Of a stretch of 64,000 nt of DNA, positions 2,189 to 63,112 are shown one piece after another. The notes under the pieces are model-generated. The model ran no database searches. It was not told where the DNA came from and worked only from the letters and a program-made list of their open reading frames with translations. Source of the stretch: Euprymna scolopes. Lineage: Eukaryota. A program made the translations under genes and the position numbers. The first letter of the stretch is position 1. Each line of letters begins with the position of its first letter. Where the stretch lies: the NCBI GenBank assembly GCA_053919585.1, contig CM132790.1; one strand, 5' to 3'.

Positions 2189-2856
2189 GTGTGCAATTAT
2201 TTTCATTTAATTTATTCTAGGTTATTGCTAATGAGAGTGAAATAGATAACAGTTAATGGCAAGCCTCTTATAATTTGGCATGTAGTACTTATGAAAAAAC
2301 AAAGCAAAACAAAAAACCTCCCCATAAATTGCATGCAGCTATTTTGTAATTTAGGAAAATACATGCAGGTAGATTTTCATGCTTGTAAAAAATATGAACA
2401 ATAAATTGCTTATAAAAATAATTCTAATTATTTGCATGAATTGATTTTCTAACTAAATATTTAATTTTGTTTATTTTTGTTTTTTGCTAACTCTTTTCAA
2501 AAACAGTTTGATTTTTTTTTCACTGAAATCCTTATTTTATGAAGTTTTAAATTGCGCTTTATCTTATTTTAATTTGAAAATTTAATATTAAAAGTTAACA
2601 ATTTCATAATATTCTTTTAATATAAATGAGTTGATATTCCATAATATTTTTTACATTGCTGTCTTACGAAAGTATACTTTAATATTGGAATTGTGCAATA
2701 TTCCTTTAATTACATTAATAAAAGATGTAATTATTATTCTACTTGATTTAATTCGTTTTTTTGGTAATTTTAACATCAATATTTAGTATTTTTTAGTCCT
2801 TTTTTCAGCAACGAAAAGCATTTGACACCAGTGTCTTTTCTTTGTTACATTTGTGC

Positions 2857-2962
2857 AAATAGAAACATATTTGTCCATTTTTTAACAATCTTTCTAATAA
2901 TGCTGAGAAATAGAAACATATTTGTCCATTTTTTAACAATCTTTCTAATAATGCTGAGAAAT
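2857..2962. repeat. 51-bp perfect tandem duplication
   Basis: aaatagaaacatatttgtcc...aataatgctgag is repeated at 2857 and 2908. Confidence 0.95.
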
Positions 2963-3248
2963 CCATTCTTTCATTTTCATAATCAATAAATAGTAATTCA
3001 TGTTACGATATTGCACAATGTTGTCACCTCTGAGAAATGGTATACAGTTCAAACACCAATGTAGGTTTCGTCAGATCATTTTTATCTGGGATTGATTTTG
3101 CAGTAATTGTTACTGATATAATGTATCCCACAAAAATACGGCATTGCATAGTTGTAGGATGAAGATAACAAAGACTTGATAGTTTGTTTTCACATATTTT
3201 ATTATCTTTTATTAACCTTCCTGAAATTTTGAGTAACTTCAGATAACA

Positions 3249-3274
3249 TTCTTGGCCTTCTGGCTAGGAATAAA
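3249..3274 (+). mobile_element. U2-headed element copy 1, 5' part (U2 stem I), separated from its body by the Tx1 insertion
   Basis: ttcttggccttctggctagga matches the U2 snRNA 5' sequence ttctcggccttttggctaaga. The continuation (caaagt.tagtatctgttct) resumes at about 5168. Confidence 0.75.
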
Positions 3275-5161
3275 AACTGGTTGGAGTACAAAGGTCGAAT
3301 CGTTGGTGGAGACTTTGATTCGAAGGAGATTATCCTTGAAGGGGCGAGCGGAGGCGTACGCTACTTACATCTTCCTGCTTATCTTTTACTGGTTGTCTGT
3401 ACTGCTTCCTGCAAAATGTCTCCTAGTTTTCGCAAAGCTCCTCGCCTCGTTTTTGTGGGAGAAGCAAAAGCATTATGTTCACAGTGAGGTCTGTACTCAA
3501 AGTCCAAGCAAAGGAGACCTGAGACTGCCCTATCTCAAATATCATAAACATACCAGGAGGTTAGCTTTCCGAGGTAGTCTACTAGAGGAAGACGTTCCAT
3601 GGCGCCCTGTTGTTGAAAGCACTTTCCCCAACCTTAAACTCGACCCGTCAGTCGAAGGCTGTCATAGGCCAAGAAGGGAATCAAATTCTTTGCTGAATGC
3701 CGAACTGCGCTTAGAGCTGTGCTGGGGACTAGGGTCCTCTCAAAACCTAGGAAAAACTTTATTGGGCATTAGTGATGGGTACCACTTCAGATCCCCTGAG
3801 GGAGCGGCTGGGATGGTCGGAGGAGATCTGCTCATAGTAGAATTGGGCATCAGGATGGAACTTTCTTGACAATTCAGAATTTTCCCTGACCTGGCTACTG
3901 ATTTGGAACACACTGCCCCTTTTTTCCAACTTCACAAGGAAAATGAAAATCTGTCCCTGGTGTCTGTACTACAATGATCATGAAATTGAAACAGCTGAGC
4001 ATACCTTTTTCTATTGCAGCTGACTCTGGGAACTCATGGAGTATGTCAAAGAGGTAATGACTCGCATCGATGCCGAGTGCTCACATTTCCATGATGCAAC
4101 ATACATCATTGACAACATGGATCTGCCGCTGTCCGGGGAGAAAGAATGGTTTTTCTGGCCATCCTAGCAGTAGCGAGAATGGTGATTTGGATCACCCGCC
4201 TAAAAAAGGTCTACGAGGGGACATTCATGTTCCAGATTGGGATCTGATCGTTTATGTTAAATATTTGCTTAAAGTGAAAATCAGATGCGATTCGAGAAGG
4301 TTTTAATAAGAGGTGGGTGCATAACATTAGTTTATACATCTGTCGAGGAGCCAGGTTTGAATTCGTGCTCCCACCGTAAAGCATGGCACATGTGGTCCTG
4401 GGTTCTTTGGAACCCATCTGCTAGAATAGCTTAGACTTTAAAAAGACTCTTGGCTGGTGATACAAATGAGATCCTGTTCCTGTTTTGTTTTTGGTACTAG
4501 AGAACTTCCAAGTTTGCCCAACCCATGCATCCTTTTCTTTTTTACCCCCCCCCCTCCCCCATCTTCCCCCACTTGGAGATCACCTTCCACCTGCGTTTTC
4601 CCTCCCTAATATTTTCTCCCCACATCTCCCAGTAAATCACCCCAATCTCAATTAGACCGTCCTGCTTGTTTTCGGCTCCGGAAAACAGTGGGCGATCTTA
4701 GGGTCGGGAGGGACCATCTTAATAGGCATTTTATTTGGTTCAATCTGTTCTTTTTTAGGTTTTTGTTAGCTTTTCTCCACTCCTCACCGCAAATTTTTTT
4801 ACACCACCAAATTCAAAGACTTTTTTTTATCTAATGATCTTTTTTCTCATTTTGCATCATTTAATCATTTATTAAAAAAATAAAATTCACACACGCATAC
4901 ATGTACATAATTTTTTTACAAAAACGCTGGGGAATTTATTTAGTAGGTTTGACTCCACAGAGTGAATGCAGTATTGTGGTAAATGGTGGCAGTCAAGAGT
5001 AATCTCCGAAGTTTTTAAGACCTTTTAGAAAGATCCTGCATCCCCCCCCCCTCCCCTAAATTTCTTATAGGGCTTCATGCCTAAGTTTATTTATTTGTAA
5101 ATTTTTACTCTTATTGTTCAAACTTTAAATTGTAAAATTTACGATCGGTAAAGTATATAAA
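3275..5161 (+). mobile_element. 5'-truncated Tx1-clade (L1 superfamily) non-LTR retrotransposon; ORF2 remnant about 3275-4378 plus 3' region
   Basis: Post-RT ORF2 motifs LSLKGRA..., FLW and KGDLRLP; then LDNSEFSLTWLLIWNTLP; CCHC knuckle CPWC...ETAEHTFFYC (3952-4017); C-terminal LKVKIR...KRWV. Flanked by a candidate TSD taggaa(t/c)aaa. The 3' boundary rests on that TSD. Confidence 0.8.
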
Positions 5162-5366
5162 TAGGAACAAAGTTTAGTATCTGTTCTGATACTACACTTC
5201 ACTTTTTCTGTCCTTGATCAGGGGAGGAGAAATCCTTCTAAACAGGCAATTTTTATTTTTGTTCCTATCCAGAATGCCCTCTTTTGGGGAGCTGGATTTT
5301 CCCCCACATTAAAAACCGACCTTGTGTCTAACTCTGCCCTCGTTGGGAGGAAAGTAAATAGGAACA
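5162..5366 (+). mobile_element. U2-headed SINE-like element, subfamily B, copy 1 body
   Basis: caaagtttagtatctgttct (U2) followed by the family body ggaggagaaatccttc...aatttttatttttg...gtctaactctgccctcg...taaataggaaca. Confidence 0.85.
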
Positions 5367-5376
5367 TTAGATAACA

Positions 5377-5595
5377 TTCTTGACTTTCGGGTCAAGGTCA
5401 GTGTAGTATCTGTTCTGATGCTACACATCATCTTGTCTGCCTTCTGTTAGTGGAGGAGAAATCCTTCATGATTGAGACAATTTTTATTTTTGTTCCTATC
5501 CAGAGTGCTCCTTTTAGGGGAACTGGATTTTCGCCACATTAAAAACCGAACTTGTATCTAACTCTGTCCTTGTGAGGAAGCAAGCAAATAAAAAC
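5377..5595 (+). mobile_element. U2-headed SINE-like element, subfamily B, copy 2
   Basis: Head ttcttgactttcgggtcaaggtcagtgtagtatctgttct and the same body as copy 1, arranged head-to-tail with copy 1. Confidence 0.85.
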
Positions 5596-6445
5596 TTAAG
5601 TGATGTGGACAATAATATGAGGACTAGGAGGGTTGCTCTTCCCCGAGCATAAATAGGGTTAGCTGGTTTGAGTAACCTTTTTATTAAACCATAAGTTTAA
5701 TCTAGTATCCCCAAACTAACTGCAGAGATGTATTCCCCACCTTCTCAAAACCCTAAAATTTCTATTAGACAACTTCATTTATTATGAACTTTTAAAAGTT
5801 GAAGACAAGTCAATATTACATGTGATAGAAGCTGCCATCTTAGATTCTAATAATTTCTGATGTTTCAATATTGGCCTGTTTTTTATGTTGTTCACTGGAC
5901 TAAATACAAGAAAATGCAATGCATTTATTTCTCTCTCTCTTGTAATAAAGTTATTTTGCTATTTTCAGTAGAACCCGTCATTGATTTGCAAAGCTAAAGA
6001 TTTAAAAAAAATATGAAGTTTCTAATTTATCATTGAACTTTACATCTTTAACTTTTGAAAGAGTCTAATTTAAGTTTTAGTAGTTCAAAATCCATTAACT
6101 GCTTCAAATAAATTTAAAAAATGATTGTACATACGTCTCATGGATATTTCAATTCTTTTTACTCGGATAGCAAATAATTTAACTGTGTTTCAATCTAAAG
6201 CAATTCTCACCCAAAAGATAGTTTCTCTAAGTGGATAAAAATAACTTACAGTTTAAATATTTTATGAATAATCTTGGCAAATTTGGGCATACTTTATTGG
6301 TTTTGAAAATATAGTTTTTTTTTTTACCAATTGACATAAAATTTAATCATAGAATATTATTATAATCTTCAAAAAGCCTGCAAATTTTTCATGTTTCATG
6401 CCATAGAACCAAAGATATGAGCATTTCAATATTCAATTTGACTAC

Positions 6446-6495
<50 letters not shown>

Positions 6496-6627
6496 GCAAA
6501 TAGTTAATAAACATGTTAAAAAACACTTTGAAAAAGAGTTATTTATTATTTAATCTGAAAAGGAAACACTTAATAAATGGATAGTCCTTAATCCACATAG
6601 TTTTGAAGAAATACTTTCCTATATATA

Positions 6628-7738
6628 TACTCATGAGCAAAAAAATAATGGGCCAAAAGTGAAAGAATGAATAAATCGATTTTTCAATATTTTTTCATGA
6701 ATTTTTGTTCATTTTAACTGAAAATTTCTATTTTGCAGATCATTATTATTATAGCATATAATAATAAGTGGAAACATTAATCCTAAAAATGGTAAGACCG
6801 CATCTTGAACTGAATTGCAGAATTAAGGCAGTCCAAAATGACTTACAAGCAGATTTTTGATATTTTAAGAAAAGAAAGTGAAAACATCTCTTTCTGTAGT
6901 GAAGTGAATTGGGCAAAGGTTCGAAGTTGAATCTGGTTGCCCTAGAGCATTCACTTTGAAGGACGACTACAGGCTTAAATTAACTGTTTTGAAGGATTGA
7001 AAGAAAACTTATGTTGACCATAGCAAAGAATTCAAAACAGAGACTGGAAATTCTCTTTGTAGATATACAATCTCTAGACGAATGAAAGAAATGGGATTTT
7101 CTTCTTAAAGGTGTGCAAAGAAGCCATTTTTATCTAAGAACGTCAATGATAGAAAGAGATTTTTCTCATTATGACAAGAAAGATACAGACTGGTTCAGAA
7201 ATGTTTTCTGGTCAGATGAATCAAGATTTTGTCTTGTTAGTGATGCTCCCAAACGGTGCATTCAAAGAACTGGAGAAAGATTTTCACCAAGTTGCATAAA
7301 AATGACAGTTAAACACCGGAATGGAGAGATAATAGTATGGGGAACTTTTACTGCAGCAGCAGTTGGGGAACTTATTAGATGTGAGAAGTCAATCAATGCA
7401 AAGGAATACATTCGAATATTAGAAACAGGACTGTTACCAAGTATCCAGAAGCTGGGAATATCTCAGAACATTATTTTTCAACATAATAATGCCCCTGCAC
7501 ACATTGCTAAAGTCACAAAAAATGGTTTTCTGATAATTCAATTAATGTGATATTTTGGCCAGGTCAAAGCCCCGATTTAAACCCAATCGAGAATATTTGG
7601 TCCATAATATCTTGTGCATTGGATGGAAGAACTTTTTCGAACAATGACAGACTGTGGGAGCTGTGCAAAGCAAATGGAATAGATATTGTAGTGATAATTT
7701 CAATTGTTTACATGCGTTAAAGTGGTTATCAAGTAATT
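6628..7738 (+). mobile_element. Decayed Tc1-family transposon (DD34E-type transposase pseudogene)
   Basis: VFWSDESRF, VKHRNGEIIVWG, FQHNNAPAH, then after a frameshift WPGQSPDLNPIENIW. Probable left TIR follows a TA run; no right TIR found. Confidence 0.9.
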
Positions 7739-9074
7739 AACTAATTTATTGAAAAAAGAAACATTCCAAGAAAAATTCAATTTGCTTCAAATTCATATAA
7801 CATTTCCATTTCTTTTTCTTATAGAAAACTTGTTGCTACTATGTGACTTGATAAGCGGTTATATTCTATTTGCCTTTCAATTGAATTCTAGTTAAATGAG
7901 AACCAAATAAATGGATCATAAATCACTTTTTCGTCTTTTTATTTTCTTTAGTTAAAATTCAATAAAATAAAATTTATTTTTAAATCATGTTATTGAAAAG
8001 CAACTCAAAATTGTTTCTTTTAACAATAAGTATGTTTTAATAACTTGGTCTTAAAATATTTTCTTATAAGTCTGCTTGAAGAACAATCAAATAAGATCTC
8101 AAATGTAAAACGAGATACATGATTTTACCGATTTATTTTACTCAATTAAACCAAGTTTTTCAATCGATTGCTGGCATCTTTTGTTGTGTAGACAAAATCA
8201 TGAGTAATTCGCAATCGTTTCATTATTAATAATTTGCAATTATGTTAGATATGAAATGTCTTTGTGTCTATGACTTAACACGATCATCATAGTAATGAGA
8301 AAGATATGATTTATTTTTCCATTGCAATTTTTGTTTTTATTTTTTCACGAGTTTCTAGTTGCCAGTTTTTCTTAATTTTATATGGACTATTTTTGATTCT
8401 CCTTTTATTCAATACTTTCTGCACACAAGTGTTGTTTAGCAGATTGGAATTTTGTTTGTGTAGAAAAATGAGTGACAAAATGATACATCTTGAAAAATAG
8501 ATCTGAAATCCTAACAATATCAACACAATAATGGAACCATTTTACAACCATTCTCAAAGTTCTACACAATGTAAAAATGTTTTCTGAGTCAGCATTTAGA
8601 CAATCAATTTTGGACAAAATAATGATTTGTGTCAGCACATGAACAGAAGTAAGAAAAGGTTATCTTTTATATACAATGAGAAACACTAGCACTAACATTG
8701 GTAAACTCTAGAATGTTTATGGAGGAAAGGTGATAATTTTATGATTAGAAAAAACTTAATGGACACTAAACAAAAAGATGATAGAACTTCTGTCCACCTT
8801 CATATAATGTTCAAGTCTACAAACGCTTAATTTCTAACCATCAATGTTATTACTTTTTCTACTTTTTTCTTTTTTTTTATGACATTGTATCAATAGCATC
8901 TCTTCCTCTGTACATTTAAACTGCATTTCTCTTTTGCTGACCCTCATATTTAATAGAGTTGTGTCCTTGTCTTCTTGCGTGTTAGATTTAACTAATATGT
9001 TGCAGGCCATATACATCTGACAAACTATTACAATGATAAATCGTTTCATTTAACGAATATCTTCCAGATTTTAT

Positions 9075-9352
9075 GTTTCTGGACATGACCTTGAACTATA
9101 TCCGAGGGTGAGGCTCATGCTTGTGGGCTTTGGGGAGTGTGGAGCCACTCTTTAATTGCCATTGCTCCCAGGTCCACTCTGACCCAGAGTTGTAGTAACT
9201 GTTAGGGTCCCAATTATGGGTTAAATAGAAACCGACTTGAAAAAAAACATTCTATTAAATAAACTTTTTCTTCAAAATCACCGGATTCGGCATTAAATAA
9301 CCTGAAAAGTGTTGATATGCCGTAAAACAAAAACAATTAACCAATTAATTAA
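9075..9352 (+). mobile_element. SINE-type interspersed repeat with 12-bp TSD
   Basis: Direct repeat tccagattttat at 9063-9074 and 9353-9364. Body ccaggtccactctgaccc...gttagggtccc and tail gatatgccgtaaaacaaaaac resemble, from memory, an abundant octopod SINE. Confidence 0.8.
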
Positions 9353-10501
9353 TCCAGATTTTATTATTAGGAAAACAAATAAAAACAATAGAAATGGTAT
9401 AAGGAATCATCTTGCAGACTTAGATACTCGAGTATTTGATATGACTGCTTGGTTTTTCTTGGTCAGTGGTTAAAACTTTCCGAGAAAGAACAATTTATCA
9501 AATGTTAAGATCTCTCCTGAAAAGGAAAGTTTGTTTAAAGCTGCAGCAGAGTTGTAGAGGTGGTAGAATTTGGAATTCAAGGGCTGAAATCATGAAAGAG
9601 AGAGAAAGTAAGTTCAAGCCAACTGAGGTAGATACTGCATTTTGGTCTTTAATCTTTTGCTTGAGATTTTAAATGGTTAATGCTTCCATGATTATCTTCT
9701 GATCCCGCAACAGACATAGGGCTGTCATCTCAAAATAGATGATAATCCATAGTATTTAAGAGTCTAAAACATCTTTTTATGTGTTTGGGCTAGAGTTTCT
9801 TTTCTGATTGGCTGTGCTCGGATACTTTGAATGTTTTATTAACTGAAATAAAACATAGATGGATAACTGGAGAAAGAATTGAGTTTATTTTTGTTACATG
9901 CGTTAGGTATGTTACAATGGTCACTTCAAGTTAAGTCTCCAGTCAACCAAATGTGCAGAATGTGACAACATTAAATTCTTCTTGCCATGTGGGCGTAGTT
10001 TCTTAAACTGCATACGGCATATGTATTCTTTCAAGTTAACAAAGTCAGAATCTTAGTTTATAAGTAATATAATAAACATGCGGTTATTATTTTCAAATTA
10101 TCTTTTTGTTTTTAAAGTGAATATTTTGCGATTATCATTTAACAAAAATTACATATGATATTAATACTGATACTACAACAATATATATATAACTGAAACT
10201 TCATTATTCAGCATATCTAGATAAGTATACTCATTTTGATACAATGAGATGCAATAATAGTGCTGCAGAGCCATAAAAAGGGAAAACATTTTAATTTATT
10301 TTATTTATAAATTTTAAATTATACAAGAATCGAAATGGTAATATGGGGCTTAACACTTAGAGCAGAATTGCACAATAATTCCTAGTAAACTTTAGAAGTA
10401 GTTGAAAATTTATCAATTCCGATCAATGAGCATTTGTGAACCCTCACGATGTCACTCACAAAATTGCATAATACAAAATATATACAAGTATAAAAAATGA
10501 A

Positions 10502-10908
10502 TCTGATATAATATAAGAAGACATGGGTTCTTCATTCAATCTTCGGTAGAAAAAAAAACAAAAAACAAAACATTCAGTCGGGCCATTCATCATGGGCCAA
10601 GTCCAGGGGAAGAGTTAGAAGAAATTATTTCTTCAATTCTTAGTGGTAAAAGTTCGAAAACCACTGAAACTAGATAAAATAATCGACGACTGATTTCTTT
10701 TTCTTAGTTTCTATTAAATTTAGGCCGTCGCAAAAGTTTGCGCATGAATTAGAGAAGTAGTCCAGGAATAGGGAGTGACGTGTTAAAAAAAAAAAAAAAA
10801 GGAGAGAAACAGACAGACAGACAGAGTAGTTTTAAGATGATGATGTTACACACTTTTTCATTTACTCCATTTTCCGGTGTCCTAGGCAACGACGGGTAAC
10901 CCTGCTAA
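10502..10908 (+). mobile_element. Non-autonomous Helitron remnant
   Basis: a|tc start with an AT-rich leader; 3' end ggcaacgacgggtaaccctgctaa|t resembles the Helitron terminus at 32474 (CTAG decayed to CTAA). Confidence 0.55.
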
Positions 10909-11245
10909 TCATTAATAAATGAAAATGACCAGAAATAATATTATCTCACTTAATAAAATAAAAAAATAATAAGAGAAACTATTCATTAAACAGTTAAACT
11001 TTGTGAAAATGGAAGCTTTGTTATATAGCTTTCAGCCTCCAATTCGATTCTGTGTACGTTGATGCTGCCTATTCTTTTTCATCCAAATAAATACACATTT
11101 CTTTGTTTAGATTGGGGTTCTTACACTATCAGTTTTCTATCCCCCCTTCTCTTTCTATGCTAACAAATAACATTACTTTGAAACCACAATTTTTTCTCTT
11201 TCAAAAACAAAATTGAAACTTATTTAATGTGATTCTTTGAAAGAA

Positions 11246-11295
<50 letters not shown>

Positions 11296-61668: not shown

Positions 61669-61857
61669 TGTACCTATTTATTATGTCTCCCCACGGGACA
61701 GAGTTAGACACCAGGGTCGTTTTTTTAACGTGGAGAAAAGGTACAAAAATAAAAATTGTCTCAGTCGTGAAGGATTTCTCCTCCACCGAAAGAGAACAAG
61801 AAATAGAAGTGCAGCATCTGAAGAACAGATACTACACTTTGATCTTGACCAAAAGGC
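61669..61857 (-). mobile_element. U2-headed SINE-like element, subfamily A, copy 5
   Basis: Reverse complement reads gccttttggtcaagatcaaagtgtagtatctgttctt (U2) then a body nearly identical to copy 3. Confidence 0.92.
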
Positions 61858-63112
61858 GGTAGCAATTCTGAACATATAAAATGTGCAATGTTCTTTTCTC
61901 AAAGAAACTATACAAGTATGTTTTTTATTTTATTAATTGTTACCATAAAATAATTAAAAAGTTGATTTGAATTTGCTTAAAGCATGAATGTTTTTAGTTT
62001 CAATGTTTTTGTATGCAATTCTTTGCAAAAAAGTAAAACGCGTTTATTTTTTTTAAGAAACCTTAAAACTAAACAGTTGAAAATTCATCTCCAATGTGAA
62101 CAGATGTGGAGTGTAAACCAAGGTGATTATTTAAAATATAGAATAAATATTACCTTTTTAAAAAACTATTTTGTTAAAATTAATTTTTTTCTTTTTAATG
62201 AAATGAAACTAAAATCTGAATCTCTTCGATTGCAAATGCTGTGAAGGGGTGCTTGGATTACTCATTTTGATTAGTATCATCCGACCCTCAATTGTTTCAA
62301 TTCGAAACTAACTTTAACCAGAACCGCAAATGTAATGATTATTTTACTGTTTTAGATTTGTGCAACGGAAGCTTACAGATACTGTGTACTTCATCTTTAA
62401 AATGCATAAATAGCACAAGTGTCTAACCGTTGAGTAACAAATCAGGAGTAATTAAAAAGAAGAAAAATACATTTCACAAAAATCTTAATACAAATTCTTA
62501 TTAAATTAAACTGGTATATCTCAATATTAATTAATTTGTTGTAATTTAGTGTCTTTTTCACTTTCCATTATTTTTTTCAATAAAAAACAAAAAACATTTT
62601 TCAGCTCTGGTTAAATGAAATTTTATATAATGTTTTTTTCTAAATTTTTCTATATGATAATGCAGTTAAAATAATTTTTAGTCTTTTACATGTGAATTGT
62701 TATTGCACGATTTTCCCACATATCTAAACATTGTATTAACTGGATTTTTATAGCAGTTTAAAGTGGAGTATGTAAACAAAATAAAGCAAGAAATATATTT
62801 TATTACAAAATCTCTTTAAATGTGCTAAGAACTAATATTGGATTTTAAAAAATTGTCATTTTTAACCGGTAATGAAAAGATGACTATTAACTGAGGCAAT
62901 GTTTAAAAAATGTCTTCAAAAATTGTTTTACTGAAGCCTTTAAAACTTTTGGGATTACCCAGGCTATCAGCCCAGGTGACTAATGATATATTTGCTCAAT
63001 AATCTTAAAGTGAGATTTTCCTTAGTTTGAACTCCTGGAGTTGATTAATAAACAAAACTATATAAAGAATTTTTTTTTACATTTTTGAATTTTTGAGATG
63101 AAGATTTATTAT

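What the first reader, a model, noticed from the sequence alone, without database searches (positions are those of the whole stretch)
3241..5382. Tx1-clade LINE inserted inside the U2 head of a U2-derived element
Seen: U2 stem I (ttcttggccttctggctagga, 3249-3269) is followed directly by a 5'-truncated Tx1 ORF2. About 1.9 kb later the U2 sequence resumes where it stopped (caaagtttagtatctgttct). The insert is bounded by taggaataaa (3265-3274) and taggaacaaa (5162-5171). Established: Tx1-clade elements are often sequence-specific, and Keno (Tx1) and Utopia target U2 genes. Inference: this is a U2-targeting LINE that also lands in U2-headed SINE copies. Those copies would act as landing pads or decoys that spare real U2 genes, and the LINE may mobilise them, since both appear to end in taaataggaaca.
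Basis: partly seen in the sequence, partly recalled or inferred. Interest (0 to 1): 0.8.

Follow-up and report, generated by a model that had tools for sequence, protein, structure and literature searches.

The report
Dead LINE inside a U2-derived SINE head
A broken, front-truncated jumping gene (LINE) sits inside the U2-snRNA-derived front end of a very abundant short mobile element in a mollusc genome; it lies at a different point from the one used by the known U2-homing LINEs, and this one locus cannot show whether it homed there or landed by chance.

Summary
A 1.9-kb, 5'-truncated, dead LINE (3271-5161) splits the U2-like head of a ~230-bp SINE (3243-3270 and 5162-5365). A 6-bp duplication, TAGGAA, flanks it, and an intact second SINE unit follows (5371-5595).

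The LINE belongs to the L1/Tx1 group. Its best Swiss-Prot structural match is Xenopus Tx1, only marginally ahead of L1. In a tree it sits in a clade with an Argonauta element, apart from two Keno-type LINEs that I located inside real U2 genes of a fish and of amphioxus.

Those LINEs insert at U2 nt 38/39. This one sits at about nt 21/22, so it is not at the Keno/Utopia site.

The junction heptamer TAGGAAC equals the SINE's own 3' end. One diverged paralogous contig from a sister species shows the same LINE-to-U2 junction. This suggests a homology-assisted preference for the head.

Most SINE copies, however, have AT-rich flanks rather than U2 flanks. The machinery that moves the SINE is therefore not strictly U2-specific.

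The "decoy that spares real U2 genes" idea is untested. The shared-tail argument is confounded, because the shared letters overlap the target site.

Earlier notes of this scan describe the same SINE/LINE system on other pieces of this genome.

The parts
3235..3242 (+). AACTTCAG: first of three near-identical 8-mers that bracket the two SINE units (candidate target-site duplication of the SINE insertions)
   Evidence: The related 8-mers are at 5363-5370 and 5593-5600.
3243..3270 (+). 5' piece of SINE unit 1: the U2-derived head, equivalent to U2 nt 1 to about 27 (stem-loop I)
   Evidence: 20 of 28 bases match the head of unit 2, including 13 identical leading bases. The consensus of read loose ends...TTCTTGGCCTTTTGGC, precedes 5162 in 198 contigs. 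Rfam U2 alignment of unit 2.
3265..3270 (+). TAGGAA: left copy of the 6-bp target-site duplication / microhomology of the LINE insertion
3271..4379 (+). 5'-truncated, degenerate LINE ORF2 remnant. It holds the post-RT region, the CCHC zinc knuckle (C-x2-C...H-x4-C, 3952-4017) and the C-terminus with a stop at 4377-4379. It has at least two frameshifts and 6 in-frame stops.
   Evidence: Relatives P0005 and P0119 carry Exo_endo_phos + RVT_1 + zf-RVT.
4380..5161 (+). LINE 3' UTR (782 nt) with no poly(A). It holds modules also seen in the 3' UTRs of relatives: GGGTCGGGAGGG near 4700, and 4927-5013.
   Evidence: Read depth on the backbone is comparable to that of the ORF2 part.
5162..5167 (+). TAGGAA: right copy of the 6-bp duplication. 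With C5168 it forms TAGGAAC, identical to the SINE's 3'-terminal heptamer.
5162..5365 (+). Rest of SINE unit 1: U2-equivalent nt 22 onward, the Sm-site-like AATTTTTATTTTTG, the 3' domain, and the tail ...GTAAATAGGAAC
   Evidence: nhmmer E 3.8e-56, profile positions 24-209; alignment
5371..5595 (+). Intact SINE unit 2, head to tail with unit 1
   Evidence: Rfam U2 at 30 bits over 5371-5551; nhmmer E 1e-60

Best explanation
This is a nested retrotransposon insertion. A member of a very abundant mollusc SINE family was already in place. Its first ~47 nt derive from U2 snRNA, which makes it SINEU-like. A Tx1-like LINE (L1/Tx1 group, with APE-type relatives) then inserted into that head by target-primed reverse transcription.

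The bottom strand was nicked just left of TAGGAAC, which corresponds to U2 nt 22-28 (UAAGAUC in real U2). Reverse transcription stopped early, so the copy is 5'-truncated just after the RT domain. Second-strand cleavage 6 nt downstream produced the TAGGAA duplication. The copy then decayed by frameshifts and stops.

The choice of site was probably not random. The head heptamer TAGGAAC is identical to the 3'-terminal heptamer of the SINE, and possibly to that of the LINE RNA. The nicked target could therefore anneal to the 3' end of the RNA, giving homology-assisted priming.

This would be a preference for U2-like heads, not the strict endonuclease specificity of Keno. The insertion point differs from the Keno/Utopia point.

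Shown: the anatomy, the duplication, the protein homology and the difference in site. Inferred: the order of events, the role of annealing and any preference.
For: - Anatomy and TSD.
- ORF2 homology: 40-47% identity to full-length APE+RT+zf-RVT LINEs.
- L1/Tx1 group: human L1 ORF2p in the PDB at E 2e-73 for relative P0005. In Foldseek, Xenopus Tx1 P14381 is the top Swiss-Prot hit (23% identity, E 1.5e-64) against human L1 (20%, E 1.1e-62) for relative P0119.
- Intact heads read ...GGCCTTTTGGC directly before TAGGAAC... in 198 contigs, so TAGGAA was present once before the insertion.
- TAGGAAC occurs on the + strand only at 5162-5168 and 5359-5365 in 64 kb.
- A 313-nt contig from the sister species (run X19, record 12) spans 4914-5186. 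It crosses the LINE-to-U2 junction and has 22 mismatches and 5 gaps. Single-copy flanks in the same run differ from the window by 1-3 letters, so this is a paralogous copy with the same junction.
- Relatives in the clade behave like site-specific elements. L004 has a 21-nt duplication of an LTR-like target just downstream of a TATA-like box. The P0122 and P0151 loci show an ORF1-ORF2-ORF1 gene order, meaning head-to-tail stacks.
Against: - There is only one copy of this LINE in the window. I could not tabulate the flanks of the other genomic copies, whose number I could not determine.
- The paralogous contig could come from a segmental duplication of the whole nest.
- SINE 3' flanks are AT-rich with 0.37-0.41 agreement, not U2.
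- No U2 lies near relatives L001, L002, L004 or L005.
- The LINE 3' UTR has no GTTCCTA partner like the one in the SINE body. The LINE RNA may therefore end at ...TATAAA(TA) and not carry TAGGAAC at all.
Confidence: 0.6

Rival explanations
1. Chance nesting. A LINE with ordinary, weak target preference landed in one of a very large number of SINE copies. The TAGGAA repeat is simply its short TSD, and the match to the SINE tail is a coincidence that drew the reader's eye.
For: - Summed read depth on the SINE parts of the stretch is up to about four orders of magnitude above that of the LINE backbone.
- The window alone holds 5 SINE copies and only one is interrupted.
- SINE flanks are AT-rich and non-specific.
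- Relatives of the LINE are not next to U2.
- The homology between the LINE and SINE 3' regions is limited to at most 12 nt.
Against: - A 6-7-nt identity between the insertion point and the SINE tail, exactly at the junction, has a chance of roughly 1 in 4,000 to 16,000 for a random site.
- The orientation matches that of the SINE.
- A diverged paralogous contig shows the same junction.
- Members of this LINE clade elsewhere look site-specific.
Confidence: 0.3
2. One-step composite. During a single retrotransposition the reverse transcriptase copied a SINE RNA back to the head heptamer. It then jumped to a LINE RNA through the TAGGAAC homology and later jumped back. Alternatively, the LINE+SINE composite was copied as a unit.
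For: - The TAGGAAC homology would favour template switching.
- Near-identical 8-mers AACTTCAG (3235-3242) and AACATTAG (5363-5370) bracket the whole head+LINE+SINE composite.
- Template switching is the proposed origin of SINEU heads (PMC4494074).
Against: - It needs two template switches, and the second has no evident homology.
- The TAGGAA duplication is exactly what a simple insertion predicts.
- The 8-mers are equally well explained as the TSD of SINE unit 1 itself, because the same motif also follows unit 2 (5593-5600).
Confidence: 0.07

Closest known systems
Keno (U2 snRNA gene-targeting Tx1-clade LINEs; Kojima & Fujiwara 2004, as cited in PMC4494074 and PMC4640811)
   Same: The relatives are LINEs of the L1/Tx1 group with an APE-type endonuclease. 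The element is inserted in sense orientation into U2-type sequence.
   Different: - Keno-type elements that I located in real U2 genes insert at nt 38/39. In the fish locus L006 a 16-nt TSD covers nt 39-54 and the element has a poly(A) tail. In the amphioxus locus L007 the U2 sequence resumes at about nt 37.
- Here the break is at about nt 21/22, the TSD is 6 nt, there is no poly(A), and the target is a SINE head rather than a U2 gene.
- In the post-RT tree the window LINE lies in a separate clade with 100% SH-aLRT support.
SINEU and Tx1-Mar of crocodilians (PMC4494074)
   Same: SINEs with U2-derived heads are associated with target-preferring Tx1 LINEs, elements nest in one another, and some LINEs and SINEs share snRNA-derived 5' ends.
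   Different: - SINEU was reported only from crocodilians, and its shared target is a Mariner transposon, not the U2 head.
- Here the host is a mollusc and the SINE retains a nearly whole, degenerate U2 (head, Sm-like site, 3' domain).
- Here the LINE sits in the head itself.
YURECi / YURE-2_Cis in the U2-derived satellite U2_sat of Ciona, and Utopia (PMC4640811)
   Same: These are LINEs that land in U2-derived repeats rather than in functional U2 genes, with weakened specificity that recognises short U2-like strings.
   Different: Utopia and YURE encode a restriction-like endonuclease and use the nt 38/39 site. Relatives of the window LINE carry an APE domain, and the site is different.

Membership tests
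Keno (U2-targeting Tx1 LINE) | Insertion at the fixed U2 site, with the 3' flank starting at U2 nt 39 (TCTGTTCTT...) | tested here: not met
   The 3' flank here starts at the equivalent of U2 nt 22 (or nt 28 if the tail includes TAGGAAC). The reference sites were checked in L006 and L007 and in the text of PMC4640811.
Keno (U2-targeting Tx1 LINE) | ORF2 groups phylogenetically with Keno elements | tested here: not met
   In a quick ML tree of the post-RT region, the window LINE lies in a 21-row clade (SH-aLRT 100) with Argonauta P0181. The two U2-resident anchors, P0232 and P0221, lie elsewhere. Caveats: only the C-terminal region was used, the tree is unrooted, no Repbase references were available, and P0232 sits on a long branch.
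Keno (U2-targeting Tx1 LINE) | Most copies are flanked by U2 sequence | not testable with these tools
   The genome cannot be searched. There is one locus plus one paralogous contig. Both metagenome scans found nothing.
Tx1 clade of non-LTR retrotransposons | APE + RT + C-terminal CCHC ORF2 that is closer to Tx1 than to L1 | tested here: inconclusive
   The CCHC motif and post-RT region are present. Relatives have APE+RT+zf-RVT. Xenopus Tx1 is the top Swiss-Prot structural hit, but only marginally over L1 (23% vs 20% identity). No RTclass1 or Repbase phylogeny was possible.
SINEU (SINE with an snRNA-derived head) | 5' region derived from U2 snRNA | tested here: met
   Rfam U2 gives 30 bits, E 3.4e-4, with positions 1-48 aligned at high posterior probability and an Sm-site-like AAUUUUUG. 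This is below the gathering score, so it is a derivative and not a gene.
SINEU (SINE with an snRNA-derived head) | High-copy, dispersed retroposed copies with target-site duplications | tested here: met
   There are 5 copies in 64 kb on both strands. Read depth is very high and flanks vary. Flanking repeats: TACTTAAGTCT at 15646-15656 and 15836-15846, and AAC(A)TT(C/A)AG around the pair.
SINEU (SINE with an snRNA-derived head) | 3' tail shared with the partner LINE | tested here: inconclusive
   Only TAAATAGGAAC(A) is shared, and 7-8 of those letters coincide with the resumed head at the LINE junction.
Utopia (RLE-type U2-targeting LINE) | Restriction-like endonuclease placed C-terminal to the RT domain | tested here: not met
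   Relatives have an N-terminal Exo_endo_phos domain. The C-terminal region here is zf-RVT/L1-like.

The most novel reading that the evidence does not exclude
The SINE head carries, at the place of U2 nt 22-28, an exact copy of the 3'-terminal heptamer (TAGGAAC) shared by the SINE and its LINE. Every SINE copy would then spread a landing site that primes reverse transcription of further LINE or SINE RNAs by base pairing. This would be a self-propagating target, distinct from the Keno/Utopia site, and would explain the nests and head-to-tail stacks reported across this genome.
Probability: 0.3. Interest if true: 0.7.

Novelty: new variant of a known kind. Interest (0 to 1): 0.45.

Why it matters
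snRNA-headed SINEs are published only from crocodilians, and U2-homing LINEs are known to use a single U2 site.

A mollusc system would differ in three ways: the SINE is hugely amplified and U2-derived, Tx1-like LINEs nest in its head, and they do so at a second site.

If confirmed, it would show that a mobile element can carry and multiply the target of its own machinery. It would also give a natural test of how far 3'-end/target base pairing, rather than endonuclease specificity, steers target-primed reverse transcription.

This single locus is only one example and is not proof. As an isolated object it is a dead, truncated LINE in a repeat.

Tried and rejected
- Rfam at gathering thresholds found no U2 gene in the window.
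- A tblastn alignment that started at 3243 suggested the 'head' might be ORF2 coding sequence. I rejected this: the extension is gapped and weak, and the DNA match to SINE heads is far stronger.
- The search for homologous proteins with the 199-aa piece found nothing.
- HMMER representatives and their contigs (L001-L003) were too short to show 3' flanks.
- Two scans of JGI metagenome contigs, one for the tail+head junction and one for the SINE head, both gave zero hits, so no extra copies could be fetched.
- The large ENA sample that holds the closest abundant relatives gives no DNA.
- The protein atlas gave no clade names.
- The sigma-70 promoter and terminator scan is irrelevant for a eukaryote.
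- A search of earlier findings by sequence was blank.
- A template-switch chimera of the U6/L1 type is rejected. Such chimeras carry the whole snRNA upstream of the LINE piece, whereas here the head is split and resumes.
- Reading the LINE as a Keno member is rejected on both site and tree.

Full report
**What is there**

The window comes from a mollusc genome, going by the run labels. Earlier notes of this scan call it cephalopod-like.

From about 3271 the sequence becomes protein-coding-like:
- frame 3270-3866 is open for 199 aa;
- 3739-4155 continues the homology in another frame, with 4 stops;
- 4134-4376 returns to the first frame, with 2 stops, and ends at a stop at 4377-4379.

These pieces align at 40-47% identity with the post-RT region, CCHC zinc knuckle (3952-4017) and C-terminus of full-length LINE ORF2 proteins that carry Exo_endo_phos, RVT_1 and zf-RVT. 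A 782-nt 3' UTR without poly(A) follows, up to 5161.

At 5162 the U2-like head resumes. It continues into a complete SINE body and tail (5162-5365; nhmmer profile positions 24-209). A second, intact unit follows at 5371-5595. Rfam's U2 model recognises that unit at 30 bits, below the gathering score of 46, with E 3.4e-4 and the first 48 positions well aligned.

Three more SINE copies lie at about 15640-15846, 26690-26890 and 61670-61862 (minus strand). There is no second copy of the LINE in the window. No real U2 gene is present.

**Junctions**

- The left junction reads ...GGCTAGGAA | TAAAAACTGG.
- The right junction reads ...GTATATAAA | TAGGAACAAAGT.
- TAGGAA is therefore duplicated (3265-3270 and 5162-5167).

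In 198 contigs of a DNA run, the letters before 5162 are the ordinary head...TTCTTGGCCTTTTGGC. TAGGAA was therefore present once before the insertion.

Mapped on the Rfam alignment, the break lies at U2 nt 21/22 and the duplication covers nt 22-27.

A tblastn alignment that began at 3243 raised the possibility that the "head" was coding sequence. That extension has two gaps and four identities. The DNA matches SINE heads far better, including 13 identical leading bases. I therefore discard the idea.

**What kind of LINE**

- Relative P0005 matches human L1 ORF2p structures at E 2e-73.
- An AlphaFold model of relative P0119 (pLDDT 84.5) finds Xenopus Tx1 ORF2 as the best Swiss-Prot match, at 23% identity and E 1.5e-64. 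This is just ahead of the L1 ORF2 proteins at 19-20% identity.

Membership of the L1/Tx1 group is thus firm. Membership of the Tx1 clade is likely but not proven.

Two more distant relatives turned out to be true U2-gene residents:
- In the fish Coilia (L006) the element lies in a U2/U5 gene array. U2 nt 1-54 are upstream of it. Downstream come a poly(A) and then U2 from nt 39, which gives a 16-nt TSD.
- In amphioxus (L007) the U2 sequence resumes at about nt 37.

This matches the published statement that Utopia and Keno share a site whose 3' flank starts at nt 39 (PMC4640811).

The window LINE is about 17 nt upstream of that point. In a tree of the post-RT region it lies in a strongly supported clade with an Argonauta hians element and marine metagenome elements. 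That clade does not include the two Keno-type anchors. The LINE is therefore not a Keno element at the Keno site.

**Is the position more than chance?**

For:
- The head heptamer at the junction, TAGGAAC, equals the SINE's terminal heptamer. On the + strand it occurs only at those two places in 64 kb.
- Orientation is the same as that of the SINE.
- One 313-nt contig from a sister species crosses the same LINE-to-U2 junction. It differs from the window by 22 letters and 5 gaps, whereas unique flanks in that run differ by 1-3 letters. It is therefore a paralogous copy.
- Members of the clade elsewhere look site-specific. L004 has a 21-nt duplication of an LTR-like target just after a TATA-like box. 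Two loci without DNA show an ORF1-ORF2-ORF1 order, which means head-to-tail stacks.

Against:
- The SINE is extremely abundant, and the locus was picked because of the coincidence.
- The flanks behind the SINE tail are AT-rich with only 0.37-0.41 agreement, so most SINE copies are not in U2-like sites.
- Four relatives' loci have no U2 nearby.
- The LINE 3' UTR shares only the terminal ~12 nt with the SINE, and most of those letters could belong to the target rather than to the LINE.

I put homology-assisted, preferential insertion at about 0.6, chance at about 0.3, and a one-step composite at under 0.1.

"The LINE may mobilise the SINE" rests on the 12-mer TAAATAGGAACA. The match is real (5158-5169 and 5355-5366), but at the LINE junction it is confounded by the resumed head.

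The SINE tail heptamer also has an exact complement inside the SINE body (GTTCCTA at 5261-5267 and 5492-5498). The second subfamily changes both sides together (GTACCT ... AGGTAC). The tail is therefore part of a SINE RNA stem. The LINE 3' UTR has no such partner.

"Landing pads or decoys that spare real U2 genes" could not be tested here.

**Relation to earlier notes and to the literature**

This scan has already described the same U2-headed SINE and associated Tx1-like LINEs on other pieces of this genome. I treat those notes as leads only.

One of them states that the stacking point is the one known U2-targeting LINEs use. At this locus that is not so.

In the searchable literature, snRNA-headed SINEs are reported only from crocodilians (PMC4494074). 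The cephalopod SINEs named in the two papers I opened are Ceph-SINEs, OR2 and IdioSINE2 (PMC4758252, PMC5786205), and neither paper mentions a U2-headed SINE from molluscs. My searches found no paper describing a U2-headed mollusc SINE.

**Verdict**

The insertion site is new relative to Keno and Utopia, but targeting remains unproven from this locus.

Noticed in passing
window 3235-3242, 5363-5370, 5593-5600; 15646-15656 and 15836-15846: Both SINE units of the tandem pair are bracketed by near-identical 8-mers, AAC(A)TT(C/A)AG. The solo copy at 15.6 kb is bracketed by an exact 11-mer, TACTTAAGTCT. Three insertion events therefore share an ACTTAAG-like site whose first letters overlap the SINE's terminal AAC/TAC. 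This suggests a target preference and/or tail-target microhomology for the SINE itself.
   Followed up: partly
window 5261-5267 / 5359-5365; 5492-5498; 15765-15770 / 15836-15841 region: The SINE body holds GTTCCTA, the exact complement of the tail TAGGAAC. Subfamily 2 has GTACCT paired with AGGTAC, a change on both sides. This fits a stem that closes the 3' domain, which is the subject of another note (s1-272098).
   Followed up: partly
window 17397-17430: An isolated U2-leader fragment (equivalent to U2 nt ~5-41) is followed by unrelated sequence instead of the SINE body. From 17807 an ~8.3-kb CT-rich 22-25-bp satellite runs to 26128, interrupted by N gaps. Another SINE copy lies just beyond it at 26690.
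   Followed up: partly
window 4144-4317, 4405-4491, 4927-5013: Three short segments at the end of the LINE ORF2 and in its 3' UTR have summed read depths 100-500 times that of the rest of the LINE. Most reads differ from the window at fixed positions. An abundant related family, or a non-autonomous derivative, must share these modules. The 4927-5013 module is also recognisable in the 3' UTR of relative L004.
   Followed up: no
window 2857-2958: A perfect tandem duplication of a 51-bp unit that begins AAATAGAAAC lies 280 bp upstream of the nest.
   Followed up: no
L006 (Coilia grayii) 2246-7657; L007 (Branchiostoma lanceolatum) 7098-7270: Keno-type LINEs lie inside real U2 genes. In L006 a 16-nt TSD, TCTGTTCTTATCAGTT, covers U2 nt 39-54 and the element has a poly(A) tail, within a U2/U5 tandem gene array. 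These are useful reference junctions.
   Followed up: yes
L004 674-694 and 7261-7281: A full-length relative (ORF1 + ORF2, P0119) is flanked by a 21-nt direct repeat located just downstream of a TATA-like box of an LTR-type repeat.
   Followed up: partly
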